Origin: Ranitomeya imitator
Taxonomy: Eukaryota
Direction: 5' to 3'
Length of the DNA: 64,000 bases
Assembly: GCF_032444005.1 (NCBI RefSeq)
Contig: NC_091288.1
Location: forward strand, 217,062,001 to 217,126,000
The position numbers and the translations under genes were made by a program. The stretch's first letter is position 1; each line of letters opens with the position of its first letter. Below, in pieces: positions 11,519 through 64,000 of the stretch. The notes under the pieces were generated by a model. The model made no database searches. It was not told the DNA's origin and saw only the letters and a list, made by a program, of their open reading frames with translations.

Positions 11519-11549
11519 ATTTTAATGTGTGTGTGTGTGTGTGTGTGTG
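11519..11549. repeat. (GT)n microsatellite
   Basis: Run of about 12 GT units. Confidence 0.9.
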
Positions 11550-11739: not shown

Positions 11740-12027
11740 GGACGGGATCACACTGGTGACTAAAACGGACGAGTGTAATGCGATAAAGAACCACATTGCA
11801 CTTGGACCAATGTTAAACTATGGGGCAGCATCCGAGTGCTGTGCGTTAAATGCTGACCCCGGCAATGGAAGAGATGGAGAAATTAGTTTCTCCGCCTCTG
11901 CGAGAGGCTCGGCGCACAGACACAGGACACTCGTTTCCCGCTCGCAGCAGAGCAGGAGCCGAGGGTCATTAGCATATCGCATCCGATGCTTTCGCATCGC
12001 ATGCAATAAGCTAGTGTGACCCCCGGC
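11740..12027. mobile_element. PIF/Harbinger-type MITE
   Basis: Imperfect TIRs GGACGGGATCACACT and AGTGTGACCCCGGCC, flanked by TTA on both sides (11737-39 and 12028-30). Confidence 0.75.
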
Positions 12028-12199
12028 CTTAGGGGTGAATCTGGCCTTAGACTAGTTTAATGAGATCTGATCTGAGGCCTCTATTGGGAGGGGATTTTGG
12101 TCTAGGCCATGGGATCTGATCTGTTTCTGATTTGTTGTAGGGGGTTTGTGTTTATCGGGTTTGTTTGTTTGGTTGGGCTGGTTTCATTACTAGGCCCGG

Positions 12200-34689: not shown

Positions 34690-34786
34690 ATGATGGACAC
34701 ATTCAGTGTGATGTACTTTGTTGCTGTTGTTCTCCCCATAGTTCTCATCACAGGCCTGTGTATCAGCTGTCATAGAAAGATACCAA
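34690..34786 (+). CDS. LAT: LAT coding exon 1 (short ectodomain, TM, CxxC): MMDTFSVMYFVAVVLPIVLITGLCISCHRKIP
   Basis: Polypyrimidine tract and AG at 34682-83; phase-1 GTAAGT donor at 34787. LCISCHR resembles human LCVHCHR. The upstream acceptor implies a non-coding exon that I did not locate. Confidence 0.9.
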
Positions 34787-34905
34787 GTAAGTGTTGGAAT
34801 TCTCAGTATAATACGTGTCATGGCGAATATGAAAGATGTTGTAGAAGTCTGAATTTTTAAAAAATTTTTGTAAAAAAAAAACTTTTTTTGTGCTTTCTCT
34901 CTTAG

Positions 34906-34939
34906 TTCACATAACGCAGACAGATTACTGTGATAACAA
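34906..34939 (+). CDS. LAT: LAT coding exon 2 (IHITQTDYCDNK)
   Basis: ttttttgtgctttctctcttAG acceptor, GTAAGT donor, phase 1 to 2. Confidence 0.8.
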
Positions 34940-34994
34940 GTAAGTTATTCCATTCATGTAAATTTATATAATCAACAGCATCATTTAAATAAAT

Positions 34995-35325
34995 AGATTC
35001 CCTCATAAAAACAGCGCCACCTATAGGACATAAAGATATAAAGTCTATCAGGAAGTAATGAAACAGCGCCACCTGTAGGTCATAAAGGTGTATAGCGTAC
35101 ATCAGGAAGTATGGACACAGCGCCATCGACAGGAAGACTCCACCAGGAAGCCGAAAAACAGCGCCACCTACAGCACATAAAGATATAAATACTCCATCAG
35201 AAACTATGGATGGTCATAAAGGTCTATAGAGTCAATCAGGCAGTATGGAAACGGCACCACCTACAGGTCATAAAAATATGTAGTGTGCATCTGGAAGTAT
35301 AGGAACAGCGCCACCTGCAGGTTAT
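34995..35325. promoter_or_regulatory. Degenerate repeat (about 52-bp units) carrying six CTCF-like motifs and ETS cores, in LAT intron 2
   Basis: CAGCGCCACCTNNAGG-like at 35012, 35064, 35118, 35159, 35252, 35306; CAGGAAGT at about 35049 and 35103. Function is inferred, not shown. Confidence 0.5.
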
Positions 35326-35506
35326 ATGTCGATAGACTCCAATTGGGCAAAAATTCTCTTGTTTCTCATCTTCATCTTTGGTTACATTTAGAGCCTACGT
35401 AGGCATGGCCACCTAAAGTACATTTTTTAGGGGAGGGATAAAATTGATGGGCAGTACTACATTACCCAGACTGATTTTTTTGTATTCTCATTCTCTTGTG
35501 TCGTAG

Positions 35507-35559
35507 GACTCATTATGCTCCACCTTCATCAAGCTTTATGATTATGAATAGACCACCAG
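35507..35559 (+). CDS. LAT: LAT coding exon 3 (THYAPPSSSFMIMNRPP)
   Basis: tctcttgtgtcgtAG acceptor, GTAAGG donor, phase 2 to 1; the other two frames contain stops. Confidence 0.8.
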
Positions 35560-35784
35560 GTAAGGCCTGACCTCAGATTCCCACATCTGTTTGACCACCC
35601 CATGGAGACAGAACGTTCTTTGTAATGTACCGGAGACGGCCTGCCTGCTCTAACCCCACGATATTTCCATAAACACCCAAACATTGATCGTATCCGAGGA
35701 TCAACCCCAGAACAACAAAGTTTAGACCGTAGGACATGTTCCTCGGCTGCTGAGAACTGACCACCATATCCTCTGTCTCCACAG

Positions 35785-35848
35785 CTCACCTGCGATCAGT
35801 CTCCTCTCAGGGCACCATGTGCCACCAGGACATCTTGCTCACCATTCC
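35785..35848 (+). CDS. LAT: LAT coding exon 4 (AHLRSVSSQGTMCHQDILLTIP)
   Basis: ctctgtctccacAG acceptor, GTACGT donor, phase 1 to 2. QDILLTIP resembles human QPDLLPIP. Confidence 0.85.
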
Positions 35849-36221
35849 GTACGTATCCGTCATCTCCATATCCCTGACGTTGGCCTTCTCCTCTGCACCT
35901 ATCTTCACTCAGTAGGGTATATGCCTCAATAGATTGTAAGTTCTGACGGTTTCCAGGTCAGTGTGAACAGACACACACATTAGAAAGTTGACTCTGTTGA
36001 CCTGAGAAGGCCTCGGTGTTTTCGTAGACTTCTAGAAAGTAATTCAGAGGTTGGGATTTCTTACACTTCCTCATATCACGGGCTGACCACAGATTTATAG
36101 CTTCTTGAGGGTTCTTGATGATAAGGAAGTACGTGATAACACCACTACAGATGAGCAGATCACACTGAGATAAAGGGCTCCTACGAGTGAGCTAAGACCC
36201 TCTGAACATCTGTCTCCACAG

Positions 36222-36274
36222 GAAGTCACCCAACTGCGAGAGCCGTAGAAGTTCGGTGGGAAGAGAAATTCAAG
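36222..36274 (+). CDS. LAT: LAT coding exon 5 (KSPNCESRRSSVGREIQ)
   Basis: tctgtctccacAG acceptor, GTAGGT donor, phase 2 to 1. P|KSP resembles human P|RSP. Confidence 0.85.
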
Positions 36275-36765
36275 GTAGGTTCTAAAACTCATCTCATCTG
36301 GAGCATGTATCCCAGGGTTTTATTATGAGGTGGGCACCAGATATATTTGCCCCGTGGTGCTGGTGATAATGTGGGTCTGATGGCGATGATGGATATGGAG
36401 ACTTTCACCGGTTTACCAAAATTTGGTGACTTCCAGATTTTTTGTAGGACCCTTTTGTAGGGTCTACGTCTTGAGCATTGGTTGTGAGGATCTACTATAT
36501 TCTAGACCTTTTATTTCGAATGATCTAGTCAACCTCTGATACAGGTTTTTCTACTTGTCTTCCACCCACTGTATTAAGTTCATTCATATCCAACCTCATT
36601 TCAGAGACACATACAGCAGGACAACCAGTAGACAAATATCTTATGTTTATGGAGAACTTTACCTCTGCGGATAGTCTCACGTCTTCATCATATTTCTTAA
36701 ACTTCTTCTGTCATTATACTGAGTTGTCCAAGTCTTTTCTTGATTCCTTATCTTTCTGCTCTCAG

Positions 36766-36804
36766 GTTACCCCGATGGATGCGACTCCATCCCACGCGCA
36801 GCAA
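36766..36804 (+). CDS. LAT: LAT coding exon 6 (GYPDGCDSIPRAA)
   Basis: Long pyrimidine tract ending ctctcAG, GTACGT donor, phase 1 to 1. DGCDSI resembles human DGANSV. Confidence 0.65.
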
Positions 36805-37189
36805 GTACGTGACCTCTGTAATCTTATGTATCAAGCACAAGTCCAACTTTCCATATGGCACTCGTGATACCCGAGGACCATAAGTTTGGCCCTTCCTAAA
36901 GTCACCTATGATGATGGTAAAACCATCTACCAGGATTGTTGTTGGGTTGATGTATTTCCTAGTTCCCCATACTTGGTTACGACTTATGGCCATCTTGATT
37001 TAATTGGGGACATACGAGGTGGTCATCAGAGTATCTTCTGCAGGCTCTTCATGAATGACTTTACATTTCCCACTTGTATAAAATTTGTACGCGCAAGTAC
37101 AAAACCAGGAAAATAATTTGTTTAAAGTGGAAAACCCCTTTTTAAGTCAAGTGGCCGCATCAACTGTGTCCCTTCTCTCCCATCTGTAG

Positions 37190-37289
37190 GTACTTATCTC
37201 TTAAAAAGTAAAAGTATAGAAGTAGATGATTATGACGATGAAGGAGAAGACCCAAACTACTCCAATGACAACCAGGCTTGCGGATACAT
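37190..37289 (+). CDS. LAT: LAT coding exon 7 (STYLLKSKSIEVDDYDDEGEDPNYSNDNQACGYI)
   Basis: cccttctctcccatctgtAG acceptor, GTAAGA donor, phase 1 to 2. Acidic tract, YxN and GY resemble human DEDDYHNPGYL. Confidence 0.88.
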
Positions 37290-37489
37290 GTAAGAAGGCC
37301 TGATATCCAGTAGATGACAGCGTGTGGATACGTAGTGCCTGCCTCCATGGGAAATACTGTAATGAAATGCTGAATGGAACATAAGGAGATGGTGGAGAAT
37401 GGCTGACACTATGATATAGCTGACAATATGAGAGAGCTGACATTTGCTAGACCTTTTATAGCTGATAACACGTCAGAGCTGACACACAC

Positions 37490-40400
37490 GATCCAAACCT
37501 TCGTACATGTACGCAGTGCACCATCCAAACCTTCATACATGTACAGTGCATAATCCAAACCTTCATACAGAGTGCACCATCCAAACCTTCATACATGTAC
37601 ACAGTGCACCATCCAAACCATCATACATATACACAGTGCACCATCCAAACCTTCATACACATACACAGTGCACCATCCAAACCTTCATACATATACACAG
37701 TGCACCATCCAAACCATCATACATATACACAGTGCACCATCCAAACCTTCATACACATACACAGTGCACCATCCAAACCTTCATACACAGTGCACCATCC
37801 AAACCTTCATACACAGTGCACCATCCAAACCATCATACATGTACGCAGTGCACCATCCAAACCATCATACATATACACAGTGCACCATCCAAACCATCAT
37901 ACATATACACAGTGCACCATCCAAACCTTCATACACATACACAGTGCACCATCCAAACCTTCATACACATACACAGTGCACCATCCAAACCATCATACAT
38001 ATACACAGTGCACCATCCAAACCATCATACATATACACAGTGCACCATCCAAACCTTCATACACAGTGCACCATCCAAACCATCATACATATACACAGTG
38101 CACCATCCAAACCTTCATACATGTACAGTGCATAATCCAAACCTTCATACAGAGTGCACCATCCAAACCTTCATACATGTACACAGTGCACCATCCAAAC
38201 CATCATACATGTACACAGTGCACCATCCAAACCATCATACATATACACAGTGCACCATCCAAACCTTCATACACATACACAGTGCACCATCCAAACCTTC
38301 ATACACATACACAGTGCACCATCCAAACCATCATACATATACACAGTGCACCATCCAAACCTTCATACACATACACAGTGCACCATCCAAACCTTCATAC
38401 ACAGTGCACCATCCAAACCTTCATACACAGTGCACCATCCAAACCTTCATACATGTACGCAGTGCACCATCCAAACCATCATACATATACACAGTGCACC
38501 ATCCAAACCATCATACATATACACAGTGCACCATCCAAACCTTCATACACATACACAGTGCACCATCCAAACCTTCATACACATACACAGTGCACCATCC
38601 AAACCATCATACATATACACAGTGCACCATCCAAACCTTCATACACAGTGCACCATCCAAACCATCATACATATACACAGTGCACCATCCAAACCATCAT
38701 ACATATACACAGTGCACCATCCAAACCTTCATACACAGTGCACCATCCAAACCTTCATACACGTACACAGTGCACCATCCAAACCTTCATACACAGTGCA
38801 CCATCCAAACCTTCATACACAGTGCACCATCCAAACCATCATACATATACACAGTGCACCATCCAAACCTTCATACACATACACAGTGCACCATCCAAAC
38901 CTTCATACACATACACAGTGCACCATCCAAACCATCATACATATACACAGTGCACCATCCAAACCTTCATACACAGTGCACCATCCAAACCTTCATACAC
39001 AGTGCACCATCCAAACCTTCATACACGTACACAGTGCACCATCCAAACCTTCATACACAGTGCACCATCCAAACCTTCATACACAGTGCACCATCCAAAC
39101 CATCATACATATACACAGTGCACCATCCAAACCTTCATACACATACACAGTGCACCATCCAAACCTTCATACACATACACAGTGCACCATCCAAACCATC
39201 ATACATATACACAGTGCACCATCCAAACCTTCATACACATACACAGTGCACCATCCAAACCTTCATACACAGTGCACCATCCAAACCTTCATACACAGTG
39301 CACCATCCAAACCATCATACATGTACGCAGTGCACCATCCAAACCATCATACATATACACAGTGCACCATCCAAACCATCATACATATACACAGTGCACC
39401 ATCCAAACCTTCATACACATACACAGTGCACCATCCAAACCTTCATACACATACACAGTGCACCATCCAAACCATCATACATATACACAGTGCACCATCC
39501 AAACCTTCATACACAGTGCACCATCCAAACCATCATACATATACACAGTGCACCATCCAAACCATCATACATATACACAGTGCACCATCCAAACCATCAT
39601 ACATATACACAGTGCACCATCCAAACCTTCATACACAGTGCACCATCCAAACCTTCATACACGTACACAGTGCACCATCCAAACCTTCATACACAGTGCA
39701 CCATCCAAACCTTCATACACGTACACAGTGCACCATCCAAACCTTCATACACAGTGCACCATCCAAACCTTCATACACAGTGCACCATCCAAACCATCAT
39801 ACATATACACAGTGCACCATCCAAACCTTCATACACATACACAGTGCACCATCCAAACCTTCATACACATACACAGTGCACCATCCAAACCATCATACAT
39901 ATACACAGTGCACCATCCAAACCTTCATACACAGTGCACCATCCAAACCTTCATACACAGTGCACCATCCAAACCTTCATACACAGTGCACCATCCAAAC
40001 CATCATACATATACACAGTGCACCATCCAAACCTTCATACACATACACAGTGCACCATCCAAACCTTCATACACATACACAGTGCACCATCCAAACCATC
40101 ATACATATACACAGTGCACCATCCAAACCTTCATACACATACACAGTGCACCATCCAAACCTTCATACACAGTGCACCATCCAAACATCATACATATACA
40201 CAGTGCACCATCCAAACCATCATACATATACACAGTGCACCATCCAAACCTTCATACACAGTGCACCATCCAAACCTTCATACACAGTGCACCATCCAAA
40301 CCTTCATACACATAACAGTGCACCATCCAAACCATCATACACGTACACAGTGCACCATCCAAACCTTCATACACAGTGCACCATCCAAACCTTCATACAC

Positions 40401-42965
40401 AGTGCACCATCCAAACCTTCATACACATACAGTGCACCATCCAAACCTTCATACATGTGCACCATCCAAACCTTCATACACATACACAGTGCACCATCAA
40501 CACCATAATACGTGTGCACATTGCACCATCCAAACCTTCATACATGTACACAGTGCACCATCCAAACCTTCATACACATACAGTGCACAATCCAAACCTT
40601 CATACAGAGTGCACCATCCAAACCATCATACATATACACAGTGCACCATCCAAACCTTCATACACATACAGTGCACCATCCAAACCTTCATACATGTACA
40701 GTGCATAATCCAAACCTTCATACAGAGTGCACCATCCAAACCATCATACATATACACAGTGCACCATCCAAACCTTCATACATGTACAGTGCATAATCCA
40801 AACCTTCATACAGAGTGCACCATCCAAACCTTCATACACATACACAGTGCACCATCCAAACCATCATACATATACACAGTGCACCATCCAAACCATCATA
40901 CATGTACGCAGTGCACCATCCAAACCATCATACATGTACGCAGTGCACCATCCAAACCATCATACATATACACAGTGCACCATCCAAACCATCATACATA
41001 TACACAGTGCACCATTCAAACCTTCATACACATACACAGTGCACCATCCAAACCTTCATACACATACACAGTGCACCATCCAAACCTTCATACACATACA
41101 CAGTGCACCATCCAAACCTTCATACACATACACAGTGCACCATCCAAACCTTCATACACATACACAGTGCACCATCCAAACCTTCATACACATACACAGT
41201 GCACCATCCAAACCATCATACATATACACAGTGCACCATTCAAACCTTCATACACAGTGCACCATCCAAACCTTCATACACAGTGCACCATCCAAACCTT
41301 CATACACATACAGTGCACAATCCAAACCTTCATACACATAACAGTGCACCATCCAAACCTTCATACATGTGCACCGTGCACCATCAACACCATAATACGT
41401 GTGCACATTGCACCATCCAAACCTTCATACATGTACACATTGCACCATCCAAACCTTCATACACATACAGTGCACCATCCAAACCTTCATACACATACAG
41501 TGCACAATCCAAACCTTCATACACATACACAGTGCACCATCCAAACCTTCATACATGTGCACCATCCAAACCTTCATACACATACACAGTGCACCATCAA
41601 CACCATAATACGTGTGCACATTGCACCATCCAAACCATCATACATATACACAGTGCACCATCCAAACCTTCATACACATACAGTGCACCATCCAAACCTT
41701 CATACACATACAGTGCACAATCCAAACCTTCATACACATAACAGTGCACCATCCAAACCTTCATACACAGTGCACCATCCAAACCTTCATACACAGTGCA
41801 CCATCCAAACCTTCATACACATACAGTGCACCATCCAAACCTTCATACACATACAGTGCACCATCTAAACCTTCATACATGTGCACCATCCAAACCTTCA
41901 TACACATACACAGTGCACCATCAACACCATAATACGTGTGCACATTGCACCATCCAAACCTTCATACACATACAGTGCACCATCCAAACCTTCATACACA
42001 TACAGTGCACAATCCAAACCTTCATACACATACACAGTGCACCATCCAAACCTTCATACATGTGCACCATCCAAACCTTCATACACATACACAGTGCACC
42101 ATCAACACCATAATACGTGTGCACAGTGCACCATCCAAACCTTCATACATGTACGCAGTGCACCATCCAAGCCTTCATACATGTACGCAGTGCACCATCC
42201 AAACCTTCATACACATACGCAGTGCACCATCCAAGCCTTCATACATGTACACAGTGCACCATCCAAACCTTCATACACATACAGTGCACCATCCAAACCT
42301 TCATACATGTACTCAGTGCACCATTTATGCAGTTCAATATCCAAACTGCCAGAGATGAAGCCCCTGATATATGCACAGTTCACAACCCAAACCTCTAAAG
42401 CATACATACTGTAGTGCTCCATCCAAAACCTCAAATACATACATAGTGCACCATCAACACCATAATACGTGTGCACAGTGCACCATCCAAACCTTCATAC
42501 ATGTACACATTGAACCATCCAAGCCTTCATACATGTACACAGTGCACCATCCAAGCCTTCATACATGTACACAGTGCACCATCCAAGCCTTCATACATGT
42601 ACACAGTGCACCATCCAAGCCTTCATACATGTACGCAGTGCACCATCCAAACCTTCATACACATACACAGTGCACCATCCAAACCTTCATACATGTACTC
42701 AGTGCACCATCCAAACCTTCATACACATACACAGTGCACCATCCAAGCCTTCATACATGTACACAGTGCACCATCCAAACCTTCATACACATACAGTGCA
42801 CCATCCAAACCTTCATACATGTACTCAGTGCACCATTTATGCAGTTCAATATCCAAACTGCCAGAGATGAAGCCCCTGATATATGCACAGTTCACAACCC
42901 AAACCTCTAAAGCATACATACTGTAGTGCTCCATCCAAAACCTCAAATACATACATAGTGCACCG
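37490..42965. repeat. 5.5-kb minisatellite of 26/30/32-bp variant units in LAT intron 7
   Basis: CAGTGCACCATCCAAACC(T/A)TCATACA(CATACA). The unit has no + strand stop codon, which explains the long spurious ORFs. Confidence 0.97.
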
Positions 42966-43140
42966 TCCACACATTCATGCATCAAAGACACAGTCCCAAA
43001 TCTTTTTTTTAATCTAAGACTATTCATCCATCCCACCACTTCAACAAATGAACAGATCACTAGATGTAGGCTTCATTCATCATTGTAACACCTTCACCCC
43101 TCATCCTTATACTAATGCCCTACACTTTATACCCATCCAG

Positions 43141-43229
43141 TGTGGTACTACCAGACGACGGGGCCACTAATCTTGGACCTGCGCTGGTGGTTACATGCGA
43201 TGTGGACAACAGAGCGAGCCTCTCCTCAG
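43141..43229 (+). CDS. LAT: LAT coding exon 8 (VVLPDDGATNLGPALVVTCDVDNRASLSS)
   Basis: acccatccAG acceptor, GTACGA donor, phase 2 to 1. Completes GYI-VVLPD, matching human GYL-VVLPD (PLC-gamma1 site Y132). Confidence 0.9.
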
Positions 43230-43319
43230 GTACGAGAACGTTCTGTCATCTATCAGGGAGAAAGGTTTGGACCAAACCATTTCTGAGGCCTCTGATTATA
43301 CCTTGTTTTTGTTTCGCAG

Positions 43320-43370
43320 TGGGCACCGATGAAAATTATGTAAATGTCGGCAATTCTGATGACACAAAGG
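43320..43370 (+). CDS. LAT: LAT coding exon 9 (VGTDENYVNVGNSDDTK), YVNV no. 1
   Basis: ttgtttttgtttcgcAG acceptor, GTAAGG donor, phase 1 to 1. Confidence 0.9.
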
Positions 43371-43580
43371 GTAAGGGGAACGTTAATAACGGCATTTCCT
43401 CAAGATGTGGTCTGAAATTAGCACTTAACGCAAAATGTTGAAAATTGGTTTGGAAAGTTTAGCGTTCCAACACCTGGTGATAGGCACAGAACCAGAAATC
43501 TACCAGAGATGATTGGCTACCGATCTTGTTCTTGCTTCTATGGACCTATCTTGTAATAATTTCCATTATTCTGTTTTCAG

Positions 43581-43634
43581 CACCTTCCATCGATGGCAAC
43601 TACGTTAACGTCGGAGATGCGAGTGATATCAAGG
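43581..43634 (+). CDS. LAT: LAT coding exon 10 (APSIDGNYVNVGDASDIK), YVNV no. 2
   Basis: ttattctgttttcAG acceptor, GTATTT donor, phase 1 to 1. Confidence 0.85.
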
Positions 43635-43719
43635 GTATTTATATTATAGATATGCGTCAGGAAAGGCAATTGTGGGAGAAGAGGTCAGACACATGGGGAA
43701 AAGGGCAGGAGAATTAAGT

Positions 43720-44640
43720 ATGAAGGATGCTTAAAATGTTGGTTGAAATTCAATGGTGATGGTTATTGAGGAGGAGTTTGTGGAGACTGATGAAGGATAA
43801 GATATGAAAAAGGATCAGGAATGGAAGAGAAGGTTGGAAAGACTGGTGAAGAATATGGCATGGAAGAGTGGAGATATGCTGCTACGGTCAAGGTCAGTTA
43901 TGTGGTCAAAGAACTGTTAATGAGGAGGAGGCTGGATAAATTGGTTAACGACCTAAAATGGAAGAAGAGGTTGGATAGCTTAGTCAGAAATCTGTTATAG
44001 AACTTGGAGGTTGAATAGATTGGTAAAGAATCATGTATGGAAGAGTAAAATGGATAGATTGGTCAAGGATCACACATGGAAGAGGTGGATTGATAGTTTG
44101 GTTAAAGGTCAGATATGGAGGAGATGGTTAGATAAAAAGTCTAAGAATCATATATGGAAGATGTAATTCGTTAAATCAGTCAGTGTTAGGTATGGAAAAG
44201 GAGGTTGGATAGACTGGTCAAAAATTAGGCATGGAATACTGGAAATATGTCAGTATGGTCAAGGTTAAGTATGGCAGAGGAGGAGAAATACAGAGGTCAA
44301 GGATCAGTTTTTGAAGAGTAGGTTTGATAGATTGGTCAAGGATCAGGAACTGCAGAGAAGGTTAGATATAAATGTCAAGGATCTGATTTAGAATGATGGC
44401 CAAGAATCAAATGGGGAGAAGGAGGTTAGATCAAGACCATTCAAAGTCTGGCATGGAAGATGGGTTTAGATAGATTGGTCAAGGTTCAGGTATGGAAGAA
44501 GAGGTTGAATAGACCAAACAAGGTCAGGTGTGGAAGAGGAAGTTATATATAGGCTGTTCAAGGTCAGGTGTGGAAGAGGAGGTTATATAGGCTGTCCAGG
44601 GTAAGGTGTGGTGGAGGAGGCTAATTAGGTGGCTAAAATT
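43720..44640. repeat. Highly degenerate minisatellite (about 39-bp units) in LAT intron 10
   Basis: Recurring GGTCAAGG.TCAGGT.TGGAAGAGGAGGTT.GATAGA.T. Confidence 0.7.
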
Positions 44641-45032
44641 ATAGAGTTGATGGTTAAATAAATTGCTGAAAAAATAAAGAAACTTAGAGTTGTCCATCTA
44701 GTTTTTATTTGGCTCTTGGCTATTTCCCGGGGCCTTCTCATTGGAATGCATAATTTTTTGTTTAGCCAAGAGGTAACATGATGAAATCCAGCACACCGAT
44801 CAATTTTAGTGTTAGGAGATCCTGATATACATTAGATCCTTGGCAAATTTCACTACATTTCACAATATGTCAGGCGTGACTGGAGAGTTTAGACCTATTA
44901 AGGAAGGATCACATATTGGTTTACTAAGTGGCAGAAGGATTATATCCAGATAAGACGAGTGGCAGGACTTGCCAGAATAGGATGATGCTCGGATACATTG
45001 AATGCGTCAAACGTTAAACTCTCTTCTCGTAG

Positions 45033-45095
45033 GAGAAAGTCTGGAGTATGTGAATGTAGAAGATGCCGAAACCCACTCCGCTTCCATTAATCAGG
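45033..45095 (+). CDS. LAT: LAT coding exon 11 (GESLEYVNVEDAETHSASINQ), YVNV no. 3
   Basis: ctctcttctcgtAG acceptor, GTAGGT donor, phase 1 to 1. SLEYVNV resembles human SREYVNV (Y191). Confidence 0.88.
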
Positions 45096-45222
45096 GTAGG
45101 TTTTCGGGAAGGTACTAGGTAGGTGGAATGTCCTCAGGTCTTAGATGAACATGCTAGTGAGCAAATTTAGGTTATAAAATATTTCCAAACTATGAATTAT
45201 TTGCTTGCTCTGTTTTCTACAG

Positions 45223-45308
45223 GGGAAAAAAAACATCTTGCATTATGTCTTACAGAGAGTGAAGATGATGACATTCCCGAATATGAAAACATTGAGAAAG
45301 TGCATTAA
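45223..45308 (+). CDS. LAT: LAT last coding exon (GEKKHLALCLTESEDDDIPEYENIEKVH*)
   Basis: tgctctgttttctacAG acceptor, with an in-frame alternative AG at 45254-55. PEYENI resembles human PDYENL. TAA at 45306-08, followed by a GT donor at 45310. Confidence 0.88.
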
Positions 45309-45482
45309 GGTATATAAGTAACCCTCTAGTCTTGAGTTGGGGGGCAATGGCCAACTCGTTGTCTCATCTTGTCAAATATTATATCTGGGGATGTTTACTA
45401 TCTCCATCCTCTACATGTCTTCCAGGTTAGGACTCCATCCTTGCTGAAGGACAGGCCTTTATTTTTTATTTTTTTTTTTCAG

Positions 45483-51033: not shown

Positions 51034-51720
51034 TTATTCCTGCCGTTCAACTCTGGTCATAGTCCTATCGCACTGCATAGGCTCAGGTTTAACCTCAGGC
51101 AATACCGCCAAATGTTGCACAGATTTACGCTCGCGCAAGCGTCGACTGATTTGAATGGCCAAAGACAAATACTCATTCAAACCAGCAGGCATAGGAAAAC
51201 CCACCATGACATCCTTAAGAGCCTCAGAGAGACCCTTTCTGAACAAAGCTGCCAGCGCAGATTCATTCCACTGAGTGAGTACTGACCATTTCCTAAATTT
51301 CTGACAATATACTTCTATATCATCCTGACCCTGGCACAAAGCCAGCAAATTTCTCTCAGCCTGATCCACTGAATTAGGCTCATCGTACAGCAATCCGAGC
51401 GCCAGGAAAAACGCATCGACACTACTCAATGCAGGGTCTCCTGGCGCAAGAGAAAATGCCCAGTCTTGAGGGTCGCCGCGCAAAAAAGAAATAATAATCA
51501 AAACCTGTTGAATAGGATTACCAGAAGAATGAGGTTTCAAGGCCAGAAATAGCTTACAATTATTTTTGAAACTTAGAAACTTTGTTCTATCTCCAAAAAA
51601 CAAATCAGGAATAGGAATTCTTGGTTCTAACATAGATTTCCGATCAATAGCATCTTGAATCTTCTGTACATTTAAAACGAGATTATCCATTGAAGAGCAC
51701 AGACCCTGAATATCCATGTC
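51034..51720 (-). pseudogene. Retrotransposon gag N-terminal part, ending in an in-frame TAA
   Basis: MDIQGLCSSMD...PDLFFGDRTKF...LRGDPQDWA (Retrotrans_gag-like). The stop at 51034-36 is in frame with the downstream zinc knuckle and pol. Confidence 0.85.
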
Positions 51721-53548: not shown

Positions 53549-53791
53549 CTTGTTAAATAACAAAAGATGCAGCACTCACCAGATTCTTGCTGAAGATAGT
53601 GTCCTAGCGCAAAATGCGCTTCCACGGGTCCAGGTACGGCGTGAAACGGCCGTAGTCCTTCTCCTCTCCTCCGCACCTAATCCTCTTTCCTGCCGCCTCT
53701 CCGCATAATGTCTCACATCGCTTTAAGCGAATAAAGGACACTATCTTCAGCAAGAATCTGGTGAGTGCTGCATCTTTTGTTATTTAACAAG
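53549..53791. mobile_element. Short element with perfect 57-bp inverted termini
   Basis: 53549-53605 CTTGTTAAATAACAAAAGATGCAGCACTCACC...GTCCT is the reverse complement of 53735-53791. Confidence 0.85.
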
Positions 53792-56700: not shown

Positions 56701-57414
56701 ATTTTTTCTACCAACCTTTTTCAGTATGGCCCATATTTTTGGAGGCATTAACCCTAAAATATATATATTGACATCTGGGTCTCTGGGCAGACATCTTTGT
56801 TATTCCCATGTTATTTTTAAATTTTATATAGTCTTGTATTTGGGTTTGGTGATATATTTATTCCCCTTTTTATGTATTTATTTTTTATATATTTATTTAT
56901 GTATCTGCACGTAAAATTGGCCTTTTTGTATTATAGCTTTATTTTGTACCCTATAATACAGTTTATATTCACACACTGGCCATGTGTATATTAGTCACTG
57001 TGATCAGTATCGTGACACATCCTCATTTATTTTTGTTATATATCCCTTCCTCACTAGATATATAACAAATTTTCACACATATCCCTTGTCCCTGCCACAT
57101 TTGTCACTACTAGCCTTTTTATTTTCTGGCCATATATATGTATATGTATGTATATCCACTTTGTCCTTATGATTATTATCTATTTAAGCAGGCTCTTTTT
57201 TCCCTTTTCCCCCTCTCTTCCCCCCCCCCCCCCTTCCCCTACTATATACATTTCATTTTATTCTGGCCCCCGGTATCACACTGTACTTGCTCACTTTTTA
57301 TGCCCCTTCTTTGTTCATTCTCTGTTTTGCTCAGCGCTATACTGTTTCTCATTACAGTGCGCATGCCCAGTTAGAGTGACTCTTTTTCCCCTTCTCTTCT
57401 ATGTGCCTGGAAGC

Positions 57415-58170
57415 GGTACTGCGCACGCGCGGGGTCCGCGCTCCCCCTCTGACTCCCGAGAGGCGCCAGCTACGTGACCGCAGTGCGTTCCACTGCGTGT
57501 CACGGTGTGCACGCTCGGGAGTCCCTTTGGCATGGTGGGACGGCCCTTGTCTGCGTGTGCAACCATTACCCCTCTGGCACATTTGGATAACGCCTCCTCC
57601 GTCCTCCAGGATATTCCTTAGCGGCACTGCGCACGCGCGGGGTCCGTACCCCGCCCCTGACTTCCGAGAGGCGCCAGCTACGTGACCGCAGTGCGTTCCA
57701 CTGCGTGTCACGGTCCGCACGCTCGGGAGTCCCTTTGGCATGGTGGGACGGCCCTTGTCTGCGTGTGCAACCATTACCCCTCTGGCACATTTGGATAACG
57801 CCTCCTCCGTCCTCCAGGATATTCCTTAGCGGCACTGCGCACGCGCGGGGTCCGTACCCCGCCCCTGACTTCCGAGAGGCGCCAGCTACGTGACGGCAGT
57901 GCGTTCCACTGCGTGTCACGGTCCGCACGCTCGGGAGTCCCTTTGGCATGGTGGGACGGCCCTTGTCTGCGTGTGCAACCATTACCCCTCTGGCACATTT
58001 GGATAACGCCTCCTCCGTCCTCCAGGATATTCCTTAGCGGCACTGTGCACGCGCGGGGTCCGTACCCCGCCCCTGACTTCCGAGAGGCGACAGCTACGTG
58101 ACCGCAGTGCGTTCCACTGCGTGTCACGGTGCGCAAGCTCGGAAGTCCCTTTGGTCTGGTGGGACGGCCC
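57415..58170. repeat. 208-bp GC-rich tandem repeat (about 3.6 copies) in the Penelope 3' region
   Basis: Period 208, seen from repeated ORF ends at 57566, 57774, 57982. Confidence 0.92.
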
Positions 58171-58271
58171 TTGGAAGCTCGCGCAATTGAAGCTGCTTAG
58201 GTTATTTCCGGCTAATTCAGTGCAACCCCCATATACTATAAAAGCCCTTCACACCTCCCCAACCTTGTCCT

Positions 58272-58314
58272 CGCCCCACTGAAGAAGCTACGGCGAAACA
58301 GAGCTTGTCGGGCG
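58272..58314 (+). ncRNA. Minimal type I hammerhead ribozyme of the Penelope pseudo-LTR
   Basis: CGCCC(CA)-CUGAAGA-A-GC[UACG]GC-GAAAC-AGAGCUU-GUC^GGGCG; predicted cleavage after 58309. TATAAAAG at 58237. Confidence 0.75.
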
Positions 58315-58879
58315 CATGGGAACCGCATCTGCACCTCACCACCAGCGCTAGTTACCACCGCACTTGCTAGGCACCACAGGTAATTCATTCCTTGGCAGTA
58401 TATCCTTCTCCTTGCAGCACCTTTGTTTACATTGGCACACTACCTTGGATGTACTCACCAGGACATTAGCAGGTTTTTTTCTTGCTTTGCATTCTTGGAC
58501 AGACATGTACTCATTGTGTGCTCATTTATTAACCCTTCAATAGGATACCCTTTTGGTTTGTGGGGGATTATACCTTGCCCTGTGTGGATATTTGGTTTGC
58601 TCAGCGTAACTAGACTGCCCCCCTTCTTGTACCAGTACTATTATTTTACTTTAAACCCTTTATGGTATAGTGCAGATTCGTTTCTCCAGTCTGGCGGTTT
58701 AACCCCCTCCCTTTCTCTTTTTTTCCCCTCCCCATATTAAATGTTCTGTGTAATTTTAAACATATTGTTTCAATAAATTTATTACTTTTTTTTAAAAAAT
58801 ATCCTTTTTCCTTCCTCACTTCTGTTTCTCTTGTGGTATCCCACAATTGAATATGTAACTTATATAGAAAAAACTGATG

Positions 58880-59460
58880 TTTTATTTATATATGCCATAT
58901 GTTCGGAATAAAAAATATAATATTAAAAAATATGAAACATGAAAAGTGAAGCAAAAATGGCTTGTTTAAATACTATATATTCATTAAAGGAATAATACAT
59001 AAAAAGCTGTGTAGCGCAATACCTAAAAATGAATAAAAGTGCATAAGTGCCACAGCAAAAAAATAATTAAATAAAAAGAAAAGGGACAATCCATATTGGT
59101 AAGGCACAGAAATACTACAAAGTGCTATAATAAATAAATATAAAAATATAACAGTGTAATTTATACGTGTGACGATTGTCACAAAGCAAGCGCTGTATAG
59201 AAAACAGTGCCCACAGGATAATTAAAGTGCAATGGTGCCACAACAAAAAAAGAAAGGAGGGGGGAAGGGGAATACCGATGTTGTCAAAACAAAGATATCC
59301 CAGACGTAGCTCAAATCTAAAGATGGCAATACAAATGTGATGGTCCGAACATATAGGGTACCTTAGAAGATAGGTGTCTGCGTGCACACGCGCCCCGACG
59401 CGCGTTTCAGTACAAAATCCTTCGTCAGGACGAAGTATTTGCCTTAGTGACGGAGCCACT
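58880..59460 (-). mobile_element. Second Penelope pseudo-LTR/tail fragment
   Basis: Hammerhead core on the minus strand at 59397-59428 followed by an AT-rich tail, similar in character to 58306-58862. Confidence 0.55.
59391..59432 (-). ncRNA. Second minimal hammerhead ribozyme (stem I degenerate)
   Basis: Minus strand CUGACGA-A-GG(AUUUUGUA)CU-GAAAC-GCGC-GUC^GGGGCG, with a palindromic stem III. Confidence 0.6.
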
Positions 59461-60692
59461 AGGGGTTAATATTATTATTTTTGTAATTTGACTTACTGCT
59501 ACATTAATAAAGATACATTTATATGAACTCCCTGTCTGTATCTCTCTCCTTCCATGAGTTCTCTGGGTTTTGGTTCTTTACTTTGTAATTAAGTGGTCAC
59601 CACTATCTATTAAACCACACTTCACATTTTAAATTTTTCATTCGGATTTATTGAATTGTTTATACATTTATTATTTGTGAATTATTTTTCTGTGTGTGGT
59701 TTTTACCCCCTTTTGTTGCTATTATTTATCCTGTAGGGTAAAAGATAATCTGTCACACAACTCTGTCTACGGAAAAATAAAAATGTTATGGGTCTAGGAA
59801 TATGGCAAATAAAAGTGATTAAAAAAAGAAATTGCGAAATCGTAGTAAAATTTTTAAAAAAACGTGTAAATGAAAAAATTAAATAAATGATCTATGTCCT
59901 AAAGGCAAAAAAAAATCCAAAAATGAAGAAATAAGACTGAATGAAGTTCTCATGTGTCAGCACGGCCTTTGCTCTTGTGCTCGGAGAATTAGACGGTGCT
60001 ACTTGTGGTCTCATCTCACTCTTAGGGTTGACACCCGAGGAGCGTTGCGTTTAGGATGTCAAAAAGTGAAAGGTCTTACATCTTGCTCAAGAGCGTGACG
60101 AGTTAAAGGGGTTGTCCGTGGACATCAAATAAAACCTGCTAATTTAGATTAATTGTAATTCAGAATTATGAAAGTGGCATCGGCATGTCCAGATTTCCCC
60201 ACCAGTCCCACGGTCTGCTTCTGCAGGGAGCTTCTCAATATTATCCCATCAGCTGTTTGGCTCCGTTCATTCAGTGAGTTATACAAAACGACAAAATATT
60301 ACAAAAAGTTTTTAAAAATGGTCCTCGTCTCAATGACAAACTCTGAAAATAAGACACCTATGTGCTGTACCGAGGCCTGATGACGACTGAGCATCCTGTC
60401 CAATGTGGTTTTGGTGGTTTCCATTCCACCTAGTTCTAAGCGTCGTGTGTCTCATCAGATGGGGCGCACAATTACTGTTCCAGACATGCTGCTTTGGTGG
60501 GTCACGAAACCTAGTGAGAACGATAGGACAAGGTATGAAAAGCCATAAGAAAGAGCAGAGAAGAAAAGAAGAGCATTACATGGCCAGAGAAGCTGAAGGA
60601 CAGAAGAAAGGACACCTTCAGGAAGGCAATGTTGAGTGACCGTAGGAGGACCTAAGACAGAAGACTCACCGGGGGTGAACACAGAAAGATAA

Positions 60693-60783
60693 ATGTTCCA
60701 CAGCGCATTCGATGACTGGATAATTGGGTTGTTTGGAATATTGGGTATGGCCTTATTCATTGGTTGCACCAGCTGCTGGCACC
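60693..60783 (+). CDS. Candidate first coding exon of a second palmitoylated transmembrane adaptor (TRAP): MFHSAFDDWIIGLFGILGMALFIGCTSCWH
   Basis: ATG, short ectodomain, hydrophobic segment, CxxC, then a phase-1 C|GTAAGT donor, the same layout as LAT exon 1. Downstream exons were not confidently found. Confidence 0.55.
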
Positions 60784-61105
60784 GTAAGTACATCTCACCA
60801 GTTTGGCCTGAAGGCCTACTCTTTATCATGGTTTCAGGGCTCGTCCGCTTCAAGACTTTTGTTGGTGTTATGCTCAAGACTTGTGTTAAGATGCCACATG
60901 CCTCCGATAGATGTCAGTTGAAGGCTTTTTAGGCCGCCAGCTATATATTTTGACTCCCCCATAAACACTAACTCTTGGCTTGATCAAAAGTTCACAGGCT
61001 TCCAATATAGAAATCAGAATGAAGCCACTAATAGACACCCCTGAAACGTTGATTCTCCACTATATGTTGGACGAGAGTCAGAAGACCCCAATACAAGCTA
61101 GATGT

Positions 61106-61760
61106 TGTCACGGGGCTACCGCGACAGAGAGGTTCCAGAGAACCGCAGTGCTCTTGGCCTCGTTCACACACAGTGAACAGAAGCTCTTCACCTGTATTCT
61201 GACCTGGCTTTGTGCCAGCAGTGCAGGAGTTAACCTTATTGCTGAGTTGCTGAGAGTTGGGTCTCTCTCAGCTGAAGTGGATTTTGTAATCTGATCCTCT
61301 ATATAGACCCAGTCCTGACTTCAGCTATTGTCAGTGATCAGTTCTACTGCCTGGCTTGGAGGTTGAAGGAGAGTAGTGTTGGAGGTTTATTTACAGAGAT
61401 TGGTGTCTGCTGTTTTGGTTGCATGTTAAACCTATTTTCCTTCCTAAGTTTATTCCTTCTCTTCCCTTCTCTGTGTTTCCTCTGTGGTTGTGTGAGCATT
61501 TGGTGAGTTTGAGACTTTTAGTTACCTTGTCTGTATACACTGTTTATTGTTGTATTTATACACTGGTGCAGTCCACCTCCTTTGGGGGGAGAGGGGGCCA
61601 CTGATAGGGCCTGCACAGGAGACAGGGATACGCTGGCGGCTCGGGCCTCCTAACCATCATAGGTACCCCCGAGGTAAGCCAGGGCCCCATTTAAGTGGTA
61701 AGGTCAGGTGCGGGTCCCAGTACGCCGTCCTGCCCCTTTATCACCGTTTACGGCGTGACA
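61106..61760 (+). mobile_element. Solo LTR (655 bp)
   Basis: TGTCACGG...GCGTGACA ends; flanks GATGT and GATAT (5-bp TSD with one mismatch). Confidence 0.8.
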
Positions 61761-62199
61761 GATATGCTGGGTTTGGGTTAATAACATGTGTTGAGGTCAT
61801 GTTCAGGGTTTTTGTTAGGGTCGGAAGCCCCATTAGATAGCTTGATCCAAACTGTGAAACGACGGCCAACCGGATAAATACAAGGAGATTGTTTAATGAT
61901 CTGTTTAGACATGCCACAAAATGTTCTTTATGGGCAGAATGATGGTTAATATGATCATTCTGTGCCCATGCAATATTATCTTTATTGCCCGAACAGCATC
62001 TGATTTAATTGGCGATGTGCTGCCAATAAAGAAGATTTTTACGCCAGAATAAAAATGATCACATCCAACGAACAAGTGTTTCGTTCATCAAGTGATTACA
62101 ATCTTGTTAAGACTGACTGATAGTTGAGAACGAGCCCTGCTATAAATGCTCATTTTCCAATCATAAGTTCTTCCAAATGAGCCACAAGGACTTGTGAAT

Positions 62200-63480
62200 C
62201 GGGTTCAAGTTTTGAGTTAAGATATTGTGCAGATCATGTATCGAGGTTGGGTTCAGGGCTGCTAATAGTGTAATTTTCAAAGCTTGTGTCATGGTCGCAT
62301 TTAGTTCCTTTGTGGAATTATAAAACATATATCGGAGTTAGATTCAAGTCTTGCATTAGGATCAATCAACAGCATATGTTGGGTATGACTTGTGTTAAAT
62401 TTGGCTTCAGGACTCATGTTGGGTTGAGGACTTGTGTTGGGGTCAAATTCAGGTCTTGCATTAGTATTGAGTCCAGATCATGTGTTGGACTTGGATTCAG
62501 GACTTGCGTTGGGGTCAGGATCAGAACGTGTTATGTTGACTGAAGGTATGTCTTGGGGTTAGTGCAAGACATGTTAGGTTTTGGTTCACGGCTTGTTTTG
62601 GGGTTTGGTTGAGGGATTTTTTTAGGGTTAGAGTTACATCTTTCATTAGGATTGAGTCCAGAATGTGTGTTGGGTCCATGTTCAAAGCTTCTGTTTGGTT
62701 TGGGGCTCAAGTCTATGTGTTGGGTCAGTGTGCAGAGATTGTTTTGGGTTGGGGTATAGGGCTTGTGTTCGGTCCAGGTACAGGGCTTGTGTAGGGTCCA
62801 AGTACAAAGCTTGAGTTGAGTCAAGGTACAGGGCTTTCTGTTGGGTCATGTCGCAGGACATTTTTTGGGGGGTTGGGGTACAGGGCTTCTATTGGGTATG
62901 GGTGCAGAGCTTGTGTTGGATCTGGGTACAGGGATTGCGTTGGATCCAGGTACAGGGTTTGTGGTCTGGGTGCAGGGATTGTGTTTGGTCCAGGTGCAGG
63001 GCTTATGTTGGGTCTGGGTGCAGACCTTTTTGCGTCGGTGTGCAGAGCATGTGATGGATGTGGGTACAGAGCATGTTATGGGTCTGGGTACAGGGCTTGT
63101 GTTGGGTCCGGGTGCAGAGCATGTCTTGGGTCTGGGTACAAGGCTTGTGTAGGGTCCGGGTTCAGGGCTTGTGTAGGGTCTGGGTACATGGCTTGAGTTG
63201 AGTCCGGGTTCAGGGCTTGTGTAGGGTCCGGGTACAGGGCTTGTGTTGAGTCTGGGTACACGGCTTGTGTTGGGTCCGAGTGCAGGGATTGTATTGGGTC
63301 CTGGGACAGGACTTGTGTTGGGTCCAGGACAGGGATAGTGTTAGGTCCTGGGACAGGGTTTGCATTGGTTTCAGGTGCAGAGCTTCTGTTGTGTTGGGGC
63401 CCAGGGCTTGTATTAGGTCGGAGTGCAGAACTTGTGTCTGGGTCAGGCTCAAAGCGTGTGGTGTTAGTTTTAAGACATCA
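62200..63480. repeat. 24-bp minisatellite, degenerate toward the left
   Basis: CAGGGCTTGTGTTGGGTCTGGGTA; gives 8-aa periodic pseudo-ORFs. Confidence 0.9.
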
Positions 63481-64000
63481 TGTATTAGGGTGAGTACAGG
63501 ATTATTACTCCTAAAACGTCACCTCCCTGTCACAATGTAGTTGTTTAACAGGAAGAACTAAAAGAGGCATGAGTCCTTTGGTGACCGGATGACAGATTAA
63601 CAAGCTCCTTGAGAACCAATGTGGCTGACAGTGAAACTGTAGTTGACCCAGCTACAAGTACAGAACTTACAAAGCTGAGCTTAGAAACCACAGAGGCGGG
63701 TTAGATACCAGGGGCGTAGATAAGGGGGAAAGGCATTGGGGCGTGTGCCCCGGGTGTTGTGGAGGTGGTGGAGAACAAGCCACCCTACATGGACTGAGGT
63801 ATGTACAGTAGATACAAGGTAAGGTGAACCTCTTGCCCCAGATGAAGTCATAGTCCTGAATAAACCATCAGGAGTCTGCAGCAACTTTTTTTTTAATTTG
63901 TACAATTTTTCACAAAAATGTAAAAATAAGAATTGAAAGGAACAATTAAAAATTACATCCCTCCTCTGATATTTCTAACCTTTTCTTTTACACAATCTTT

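What the first reader, a model, noticed from the sequence alone, without database searches (positions are those of the whole stretch)
60693..60790. Candidate second raft-type transmembrane adaptor gene 15 kb downstream of LAT
Seen: MFHSAFDDWIIGLFGILGMALFIGCTSCWH followed by C|GTAAGT gives no signal peptide, one TM, a juxtamembrane CxxC and a phase-1 intron, the same layout and strand as LAT exon 1. Known: this layout is typical of LAT, LAT2/NTAL, LIME1 and PAG1 (for example LIME1 LCTACRR). Inference: an unannotated LAT paralogue or other TRAP in tandem with LAT. A possible exon 2 after the AG at 63550-51 would add RRTKRG but hits a stop 13 codons later, so the gene model is unresolved and it may be a pseudogene or continue beyond the window.
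Basis: partly seen in the sequence, partly recalled or inferred. Interest (0 to 1): 0.7.

Follow-up and report, generated by a model that had tools for sequence, protein, structure and literature searches.

The report
LAT-like adaptor gene beside frog LAT
The short reading frame is the true first exon of an expressed 13-exon gene that sits just downstream of the T-cell adaptor gene LAT in frogs and encodes a small LAT-like membrane docking protein that databases list only as "uncharacterized".

Summary
Window 60693-60783 (+) is the coding part of exon 1 of a real gene.

- **Transcription and splicing:** Transcript-like contigs from four public runs cover 60453-60787 and leave the genome at the GT of 60784. 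A related species' contig continues into exon 2.
- **Gene model:** The window is Ranitomeya imitator. The public 212-aa "uncharacterized protein" maps onto 13 GT-AG coding exons.
- **Protein:** It has an 8-residue N-terminus, one transmembrane helix, an invariant CxxC, a conserved RxxPxxP, an acidic block and conserved tyrosine motifs (YxN sites and a Y-L-x-V/I-L site like LAT's PLC-gamma site).
- **Distribution:** Orthologues occur across frogs, from Discoglossus and Xenopus to Ranitomeya, and in a newt. In seven frog genomes the gene lies directly downstream of LAT on the same strand.
- **Link to LAT:** No Pfam family matches. A shared phase-2 intron inside the Y+1 codon, phase 1-1 YxN exons and language-model neighbours tie it to the LAT/LAT2 family.

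Still open is whether it is the amphibian LAT2 orthologue or a third paralogue. The scan had not noted it before.

The parts
60453..60692 (+). 5' untranslated part of exon 1. This is the minimum extent; the true start site is not mapped. It holds five upstream ATGs forming three short uORFs that end before the main ATG.
   Evidence: Contig X1 starts at 60453, X5 at 60504, and X7 and X10 at about 60577. uATG list.
60693..60783 (+). Coding part of exon 1: Met1 to His30 plus the first base of codon 31. It encodes an 8-residue N-terminus, the transmembrane helix (best 19-residue Kyte-Doolittle window 10-28, mean 2.14) and the juxtamembrane Cys25-x-x-Cys28.
   Evidence: Identical to residues 1-30 of P0002. 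C25 and C28 are invariant in 15 species.
60784..64000 (+). Intron 1 (phase 1), which runs on to window-equivalent 64004. It contains a high-copy repeat (61106-61760) and a 24-bp minisatellite (62716-63444).
   Evidence: The GTAAGT donor is at 60784. The acceptor ...tatag is followed by exon 2 at L002 13313, which equals 64005. Repeats.
63552..63593 (+). It is not an exon of this gene.
   Evidence: No spliced contig uses it. The public protein maps without it. The exon 2 sequence seen in RNA is absent from the window.
34690..45313 (+). LAT, the upstream tandem neighbour on the same strand. Exon 1 starts at 34690 and encodes a TM helix plus C-I-S-C with a phase-1 donor. The PLC-gamma-site exon ends at 37289 with a phase-2 split in the Y+1 codon. 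The next exon runs 43141-43228. YVNV exons lie at about 43318, 43581 and 45033, and the terminal YENI exon follows.
   Evidence: Pfam LAT is recorded on the upstream gene in relatives.

Best explanation
Window 60693-60783 is the first coding exon of an expressed, conserved gene of 13 coding exons. Exons 2-13 lie at window-equivalent 64005-71194. The gene encodes a 212-aa type III membrane protein of the palmitoylated (raft-type) transmembrane adaptor class, and it is most likely a member of the LAT/LAT2 family that arose by duplication next to LAT.

Inferred mechanism:
- The N-terminal helix anchors the protein without a signal peptide.
- Cys25 and Cys28 are palmitoylated and steer it into ordered membrane domains.
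- After immunoreceptor engagement, Src/Syk-family kinases phosphorylate the conserved tail tyrosines.
- The pYxN sites (YENL 127, invariant SYENV 187, invariant DYVNV 205, plus YVNL 118 in most species) recruit Grb2/Gads-type SH2 adaptors.
- The invariant Tyr141 site (Y-L-K-I-L here, Y-L-E-V-L-P in most frogs and the newt) recruits a PLC-gamma-type SH2.
- The conserved membrane-proximal RxxPxxP can dock an SH3 domain.

Shown here: the gene model, transcription and splicing, conservation, purifying selection and tandem position. Inferred from family knowledge: palmitoylation, phosphorylation, binding partners and cell type.
For: Transcription and splicing: contigs of four runs cover exon 1 and stop at the donor. 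The X1 contig has 1149 further letters that are not on 58200-64000. The X10 loose end matches exon 2 at 25 of 28 bases.

Gene model: the window is 100% identical to L002 positions 1-13308, and P0002 maps onto 13 GT-AG exons.

Family: 16 hits at E<0.001 among 1.84 billion representatives. Fifteen are frog proteins and one is a chance microbial repeat protein. The broader profile adds more frogs, transcript-sized Logan contigs and Pleurodeles (E 3.9e-13).

Constraint: C25, C28, R40, P46, Y54, Y141, S186-Y187-E188-N189, D204, Y205 and N207 are invariant in 15 species. dN/dS is 0.35 against Anomaloglossus.

Synteny: the gene lies directly downstream of LAT on the same strand in R. imitator, R. variabilis, Anomaloglossus, Spea, Hyperolius, X. 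laevis and X. tropicalis.

Gene structure: there are many tiny exons and the intron phases are conserved between Ranitomeya and Anomaloglossus, with a similar 13-exon layout in Xenopus. A phase-2 intron sits inside the codon after the Tyr of the Y-L/I-x-V/I-L motif both in this gene and in LAT of this frog and Spea. The YxN exons are phase 1-1 in both genes. LAT and NTAL are known to share such a distinctive layout, unlike SIT and TRIM (PMC2196071).

Language-model neighbours are LAT 0.95, LAT2 0.95, then SCIMP, GAPT, LAX, LIME1 and PAG. For the tail alone, LAT2/LAT scores 0.89. The TRAP definition is from PMC2803307.
Against: No Pfam family, including LAT (PF15234) and LAT2 (PF15703), matches any of 13 members at E up to 10. 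The family profile found no LAT or LAT2 protein. tblastn of family members against the LAT gene gives only YVNV-level hits. hhalign of the family against one LAT exon gives nothing. Homology with LAT is therefore not shown by sequence statistics, and short SH2 motifs can arise convergently in disordered tails.

The run type (RNA) is a guess by the tool and rests on the spliced form of the contigs. Tissue and cell type are unknown. The main ATG has a weak context and follows five upstream ATGs. In dendrobatids and other hyloids the Tyr141 motif has lost the +5 proline and carries Lys or Gln at +2, so PLC-gamma binding is least certain in this very species.
Confidence: 0.75

Rival explanations
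1. It is simply the amphibian orthologue of LAT2 (NTAL/LAB), not a third family member. Amphibians would then keep LAT and LAT2 side by side, and LAT2 would have moved in amniotes, or the two arose as tandem duplicates.
For: [quoted passage not shown] The nearest language-model cluster for the tail is 50% Pfam LAT2. The protein is about 200-240 aa and ends in D-Y-V-N, and from my memory of the human sequence LAT2 also has an S-Y-E-N-V site and a C-terminal D-Y-V-N site. LAT and NTAL share the same gene layout (PMC2196071).
Against: The Pfam LAT2 model does not match 13 members. The family keeps a LAT-like Y-L-E-V-L-P site, whereas NTAL did not bind PLC-gamma (PMC2196071). In mammals LAT2 lies on another chromosome (7q11.23). 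I could not check whether frogs carry a separate LAT2 elsewhere.
Confidence: 0.35
2. It is an independent transmembrane adaptor that resembles LAT only by convergence: a TM helix plus CxxC plus short SH2 motifs in a disordered tail. It happens to lie next to LAT.
For: There is no significant sequence similarity to LAT or LAT2. Other TRAPs (SCIMP, GAPT, LAX) also score 0.89-0.93 in the language-model search. From memory, the RxxPxxP motif recalls SCIMP rather than LAT.
Against: The tandem, same-strand position beside LAT is kept in seven frog genomes spanning the whole order. An identical phase-2 intron lies inside the Y+1 codon of the Y-L/I-x-V/I-L motif. YxN exons are phase 1-1 and intron 1 is phase 1 in both genes. 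The motif order is colinear.
Confidence: 0.15
3. It is a transcribed pseudogene or non-coding transcript, and the reading frame is not translated.
For: Five upstream ATGs and a weak start context. The R. variabilis RefSeq model is a truncated 139-aa form. There is no protein-level evidence.
Against: The frame is intact over 13 exons in every species examined, and exons 11-13 are also present in R. variabilis. dN/dS is 0.35. The cysteines and tyrosine motifs are invariant over the frog radiation and in a newt.
Confidence: 0.03

Closest known systems
[quoted passage not shown]
   Same: Type III topology with a very short N-terminus, one TM helix, C-x-S-C followed by basic residues, and a phase-1 first intron. 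The tail is acidic and disordered. It has a Y-L/I-x-V-L-P site split by a phase-2 intron in the Y+1 codon, followed by YxNV sites on phase 1-1 exons and a terminal YxN exon. The genes are adjacent on the same strand.
   Different: There is no significant sequence match and the Pfam LAT model does not hit. The first intron lies 2 residues after the second Cys here, against 6 in LAT. The family has a conserved RxxPxxP, a P-R-Y-E/Q block, a D-S-E-E-D-F-E-E block and a conserved Ser-rich block before SYENV, all of which LAT lacks. The true LAT orthologue is the upstream gene.
LAT2 / NTAL / LAB (Pfam PF15703)
   Same: Same TRAP layout, similar size and several YxN sites. From memory of the human protein, LAT2 also has an S-Y-E-N-V site and a C-terminal D-Y-V-N site. 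The LAT-type multi-exon gene layout is shared (PMC2196071). UniProt auto-names the newt orthologue LAT2.
   Different: The Pfam LAT2 model does not hit. The family keeps a PLC-gamma-type site that NTAL functionally lacks. It lies beside LAT rather than on a different chromosome as in mammals. Orthology was not tested.
Other palmitoylated or Grb2-binding TRAPs (LIME1, PAG1, SCIMP, GAPT, LAX1)
   Same: Short ectodomain, one TM helix, tyrosine-based SH2 docking motifs, and CxxC in LIME1 and PAG1 (PMC2803307). From memory, SCIMP has a proline-rich SH3 ligand near the membrane.
   Different: They are lower language-model neighbours (0.85-0.93), have no Pfam match, and show no positional link. Apart from LAT and NTAL, the gene layouts reported in the cited paper (SIT and TRIM) differ from the LAT type (PMC2196071).

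Membership tests
Raft-type transmembrane adaptor proteins (TRAPs; PMC2803307) | Short extracellular part, no signal peptide, single transmembrane helix | tested here: met
   8 residues precede the helix. The best 19-residue hydropathy window is 10-28 with mean 2.14, and it is the only hydrophobic stretch. The layout is conserved in 15 species.
Raft-type transmembrane adaptor proteins (TRAPs; PMC2803307) | Juxtamembrane CxxC palmitoylation motif | tested here: met
   C25 and C28 are invariant in 15 frog species and present in the newt. Acylation itself is not testable here.
Raft-type transmembrane adaptor proteins (TRAPs; PMC2803307) | Long cytoplasmic tail with several tyrosine-based signalling motifs | tested here: met
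   The tail is 182 residues with 8 Tyr. Y54, Y141, Y187 and Y205 are invariant, and the YxN context is invariant at 187 and 205.
Raft-type transmembrane adaptor proteins (TRAPs; PMC2803307) | Tyrosine phosphorylation after immunoreceptor engagement; SH2 partners; leukocyte expression | not testable with these tools
   Run identities and tissues are coded. No biochemical data exist.
LAT/LAT2 gene family | Significant match to the family sequence models (Pfam PF15234 LAT or PF15703 LAT2) | tested here: not met
   No LAT or LAT2 hit at E up to 10 in 13 members. No LAT or LAT2 protein appears among the profile hits.
LAT/LAT2 gene family | Distinctive exon-intron layout and splice frames shared by LAT and NTAL but not by SIT or TRIM (PMC2196071) | tested here: inconclusive
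   Partly met. There are 13 small coding exons with phases 1,2,1,1,1,2,1,1,1,2,1,1. Intron 1 is phase 1 in both genes. YxN exons are phase 1-1 in both. The same phase-2 intron sits in the Y+1 codon. The 5' half of frog LAT was not mapped, and the phases of the published mouse diagram are not in the text.
LAT/LAT2 gene family | PLC-gamma-type site Y-L-x-V-L-P (LAT) followed by distal YxN Grb2/Gads sites | tested here: met
   Met at motif level only. Y141 is invariant, with Y-L-E-V-L/F-P in Ranoidea, Myobatrachoidea, Pelobatoidea, Discoglossus and the newt. It has drifted to Y-L-K-I-L in dendrobatids and toads. SYENV and DYVNV follow.
LAT2 / NTAL orthologue | Orthologous position and one-to-one relation with LAT2 of other vertebrates | not tested
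The only lead is UniProt's automatic name for the newt protein.

The most novel reading that the evidence does not exclude
Amphibians retain a third, unnamed LAT-family adaptor beside LAT. It combines a LAT-type PLC-gamma site, Grb2/Gads sites and a conserved SH3 ligand, and it is distinct from both LAT and LAT2. It would show that the family grew by tandem duplication at the LAT locus. It may be the adaptor that couples non-T-cell immunoreceptors to PLC-gamma in amphibians, a role that NTAL does not fill in mammals.
Probability: 0.35. Interest if true: 0.6.

Novelty: new member of a known kind. Interest (0 to 1): 0.5.

Why it matters
LAT and LAT2/NTAL are the central membrane scaffolds of antigen-receptor and Fc-receptor signalling. 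Their origin and the reason for their different wiring (PLC-gamma site or not) are known only from mammals. A conserved, expressed LAT-like gene directly beside LAT throughout frogs, and in a newt where its position could not be read, gives three things:
- a candidate for how the family arose, namely local duplication;
- a natural variant set of docking-site combinations, including repeated duplication of the SYENV exon in several frog lineages;
- a concrete gene for Xenopus immunology to knock out (LOC116407699 in X. tropicalis; LOC121398969 and LOC121398099 in X. laevis).

It also lets about 20 'uncharacterized protein' records be given a functional class.

Tried and rejected
1. No spliced contig uses it, the public protein maps without it, and the exon 2 sequence seen in RNA is absent from the window.
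2. Pfam scans of 13 members found only weak chance hits (Mito_fiss_reg, FAM176, RHEX and others) and no LAT, LAT2, GAPT, SCIMP, LIME1, PAG or LAX.
3. tblastn of 12 family members against the LAT gene in the window gave only YVNV-level matches. An apparent match of exon 2 to 35128-35184 turned out to be a minisatellite in LAT intron 1.
4. An apparent 'S-S-G-T-R-x-x-x-H' similarity after the LAT Y-I-V-V-L-P exon is read-through into a conserved donor region, not coding sequence.
5. hhalign of the family alignment against that LAT exon gave nothing.
6. P0021 (593 aa, E 2e-5) is a microbial repeat protein and a chance hit.
7. Bufo isoform X2 could not be located, because only the longest product of a gene is on record. 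The Pleurodeles locus has no DNA held because the gene spans 315 kb.
8. Literature searches for the LOC numbers and for LAT/LAT2 paralogues in amphibians found nothing on this gene.
LAT was compared exon by exon by reference only, so a full LAT-versus-family profile comparison was left out. Exons were joined in scripts only to check that they reproduce the public proteins P0002, P0004 and P0029, and for dN/dS.

Full report
**Observation.**
There is an ATG at 60693, then 30 codons (an 8-residue N-terminus, a hydrophobic stretch, C-T-S-C, W-H), one further C, and GTAAGT from 60784.
- An in-frame TAA directly precedes the ATG. The donor is phase 1.

**Is it transcribed and spliced?**
- Nineteen listed runs from seven studies hold part of 60300-60800, most of them about half of its sampled words.
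- I laid four runs from four studies on 58200-64000. Contigs lie on 60453-60787 (X1), 60504-60734 (X5), 60577-60787 (X7) and 60576-60781 (X10, a related species with 6 differences).
- Cover is absent at 59946-60333 and 62080-63243. The runs therefore behave as RNA, although their type is only guessed by the tool.
- The X1 contig is 1484 letters long. Only its first 335 letters lie here, and the rest lies nowhere in the 3.2 kb that follow.
- The X10 contig leaves the genome at 60781 and continues with 30 reported letters. These match the start of exon 2, which lies beyond the window, at 25 of 28 bases.
- That exon 2 sequence is not in the window.
The one contig there runs colinearly across the supposed acceptor.

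**Which gene is it?**
- A word search with the 79-aa read-through ORF, restricted to its first 40 residues, found a 139-aa 'uncharacterized protein' of Ranitomeya variabilis.
- Searching with that protein found 211-212-aa proteins of R. imitator, Phyllobates, Anomaloglossus and two Bufo species.
- The R. imitator protein (P0002) is encoded on a locus whose first 13308 bases are 100% identical to window 50693-64000. The window is therefore R. imitator assembly GCA_032444005.1.
- P0002 maps onto 13 coding exons, all with GT-AG introns and good polypyrimidine tracts. Exon 1 is 60693-60783. Exon 2 starts at window-equivalent 64005, five bases past the window's end. The last exon ends at 71194.
- The R. 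variabilis 139-aa model is a truncated form. Its exons 11-13 are present downstream.

**The protein.**
- The first 31 residues are followed by a 182-residue acidic, Ser/Thr/Pro-rich tail with 8 tyrosines.
- In an alignment of 15 frog species the invariant positions are C25, C28, R40, P46, Y54, Y141, S186-Y187-E188-N189, D204, Y205 and N207.
- These positions define five conserved elements:
  - a CxxC;
  - a class I SH3-ligand pattern RxxPxxP about ten residues after the membrane, also present in the newt;
  - a P-R-Y-E/Q site;
  - a Y-L-x-V/I-L site, which reads Y-L-E-V-L/F-P in most lineages and Y-L-K-I-L in dendrobatids and toads;
  - S-Y-E-N-V and D-Y-V-N-V.
- Most species also have Y-V-N-L/I and Y-E/V-N-L/V sites upstream.
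- dN/dS between R. imitator and Anomaloglossus is 0.35 over 208 codons.

**Distribution.**
- A profile of five hyloid sequences, scored against 1.84 billion representative proteins, gave 16 hits at E<0.001. Fifteen are frog proteins and one is a chance microbial repeat protein.
- A broader profile added Eleutherodactylus, Lithobates, Aquarana and both Xenopus laevis homeologues. It also added complete spliced ORFs on 1-2 kb Logan contigs, which are transcripts of other frogs, and a Pleurodeles waltl protein (E 3.9e-13) with the same order of elements.
- The family therefore spans Anura, from Discoglossus, Xenopus and Pelobates/Spea to Neobatrachia, and reaches salamanders.
- Absence elsewhere is not established, because the searches were capped and the tails are fast-evolving.
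- Every source calls these proteins 'uncharacterized' or 'hypothetical'. [quoted passage not shown]
- No paper in the held library mentions the LOC numbers.

**Position.**
- In R. variabilis, Anomaloglossus and Spea the gene immediately upstream on the same strand carries Pfam LAT. In Hyperolius the upstream model contains Pfam LAT.
- In X. laevis the upstream 249-aa gene has LAT's YVNL exons and the terminal P-D-Y-E-N-I exon. X. tropicalis has a 246-aa upstream gene in the same arrangement, which I took for LAT from its size and position without checking its exons.
- In the window LAT ends near 45313.
- The 15-kb gap in R. imitator is inflated by repeats. It is 3.5-5.8 kb in the relatives, measured from LAT's end to this gene's start in the locus tables.

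**Relation to LAT.**
- Sequence statistics give nothing:
  - no Pfam LAT or LAT2 hit in 13 members;
  - no LAT or LAT2 protein among the profile hits;
  - only YVNV-level tblastn hits on the LAT gene;
  - a null hhalign against one LAT exon.
- Structure and position give more:
  - LAT exon 1 of this frog has the same layout (short N-terminus, TM, C-I-S-C, basic residues) and a phase-1 donor.
  - LAT's YVNV exons and terminal YENI exon are phase 1-1 and phase-1-start, as are exons 8, 9, 12 and 13 here.
  - In LAT the PLC-gamma-type site ...G-Y-I-V-V-L-P-D-D is split by a phase-2 intron inside the codon after the tyrosine. The exon ends at 37289 and the next begins at 43141. The same holds in Spea LAT.
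  - In the new gene ...H-V-Y-L-K-I-L is split at the same nucleotide of the same codon, in Ranitomeya, Anomaloglossus and Xenopus.
  - With 12 introns in 639 coding bases, a chance hit on one given position is about 2%, before allowing for the few motifs one could compare.
- Brdicka et al. 2002 (PMC2196071) used just such a shared exon-intron layout and splice-frame diagram to argue that LAT and NTAL derive from one ancestor. They noted that SIT and TRIM differ totally.
- A protein language-model search places the protein nearest to LAT (0.95) and LAT2-like (0.95) clusters, then SCIMP, GAPT, LAX, LIME1 and PAG. The tail alone is nearest to a LAT2/LAT cluster at 0.89. These are leads, not tests.

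**How it most likely works (inference from the TRAP literature, PMC2803307).**
- It is a type III membrane protein, palmitoylated on the CxxC and thereby partitioned into ordered membrane domains with Src-family kinases.
- After receptor engagement its tail tyrosines are phosphorylated.
- The pYxN sites then bind Grb2/Gads-type SH2 domains, pY141 binds a PLC-gamma-type SH2 domain, and the RxxPxxP binds an SH3 domain.
- None of this is shown here, and cell type is unknown.
- The 240-nt leader has five upstream ATGs and the start context is weak, which suggests translational control.

**Open question.**
- I could not determine whether this is the amphibian orthologue of LAT2/NTAL or a third paralogue.
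- I hold this at roughly one in three for LAT2 orthology. In favour are the UniProt name, the size, and the S-Y-E-N-V and terminal D-Y-V-N sites. Against are the lack of a Pfam LAT2 match, the retained PLC-gamma-type site and the position beside LAT.
- I could not fetch LAT2 sequences or the frog LAT2 region.

**Verdict.**
- It is a new, unnamed member of a known kind (the LAT/LAT2-type raft adaptors), already present as uncharacterised gene models in public annotation.
- Interest is moderate.

Noticed in passing
window 62716-63444 (also 62401-62629); L001 about 11480-12200: A 24-bp (48-bp) minisatellite of about 30 copies fills part of intron 1. A similar array lies at the matching place of intron 1 in R. 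variabilis, so the array is older than the two species.
   Followed up: partly
window 61106-61760: A high-copy repeat inside intron 1 is covered by many divergent, deep contigs in the three same-species runs but not in the related species' run. It is likely a transcribed transposable element family. It helps explain why intron 1 is longer here (3.2 kb) than in R. variabilis (2.7 kb).
   Followed up: no
window 57412-58173: A 208-bp tandem repeat of 3.7 copies at 96% identity lies beside the Penelope element noted earlier by the scan.
   Followed up: no
window 35040-35330 and about 37500-42800: LAT introns hold two satellite arrays. One is a roughly 60-bp array in intron 1. The other is an array of about 5 kb of 26-32-bp units (translating as T-Q-C-T-I-Q-T-F-I) inside the 5.8-kb intron that splits LAT's PLC-gamma site.
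   Followed up: no
alignment A3; proteins P0009, P0011, P0012, P0035, P0038: Dendropsophus, Hyperolius, Mantella and Lithobates/Aquarana carry two copies of the Ser-rich S-Y-E-N-V block, placed differently in Dendropsophus than in the ranoids. This suggests repeated duplication of a phase 1-1 exon and parallels the extra YVNV exon reported for LAT in this scan.
   Followed up: partly
L001 22007-22063 and 22939-23586: The RefSeq model of R. variabilis (139 aa) ends by reading through the exon 9 donor, although exons 11-13 are intact downstream. It is either a mis-model or a short isoform lacking Y141, Y187 and Y205.
   Followed up: partly
L002 21382-30502; L001 24512-30114; L003 32089-40991; L005 17253-21336; L007 29446-29945: The next genes downstream, on the opposite strand, are two-domain Ig-superfamily genes (V-set/I-set, about 310-430 aa) in dendrobatids and Spea. 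In Xenopus a TRIM-type RING/B-box/SPRY gene lies between. They were not identified further.
   Followed up: no
window 60453-60692: There are five upstream ATGs forming three short uORFs of 29, 34 and 8 codons in the leader of the new gene. In another frog's transcript (P0031) an upstream in-frame ATG is open into the main ORF.
   Followed up: partly
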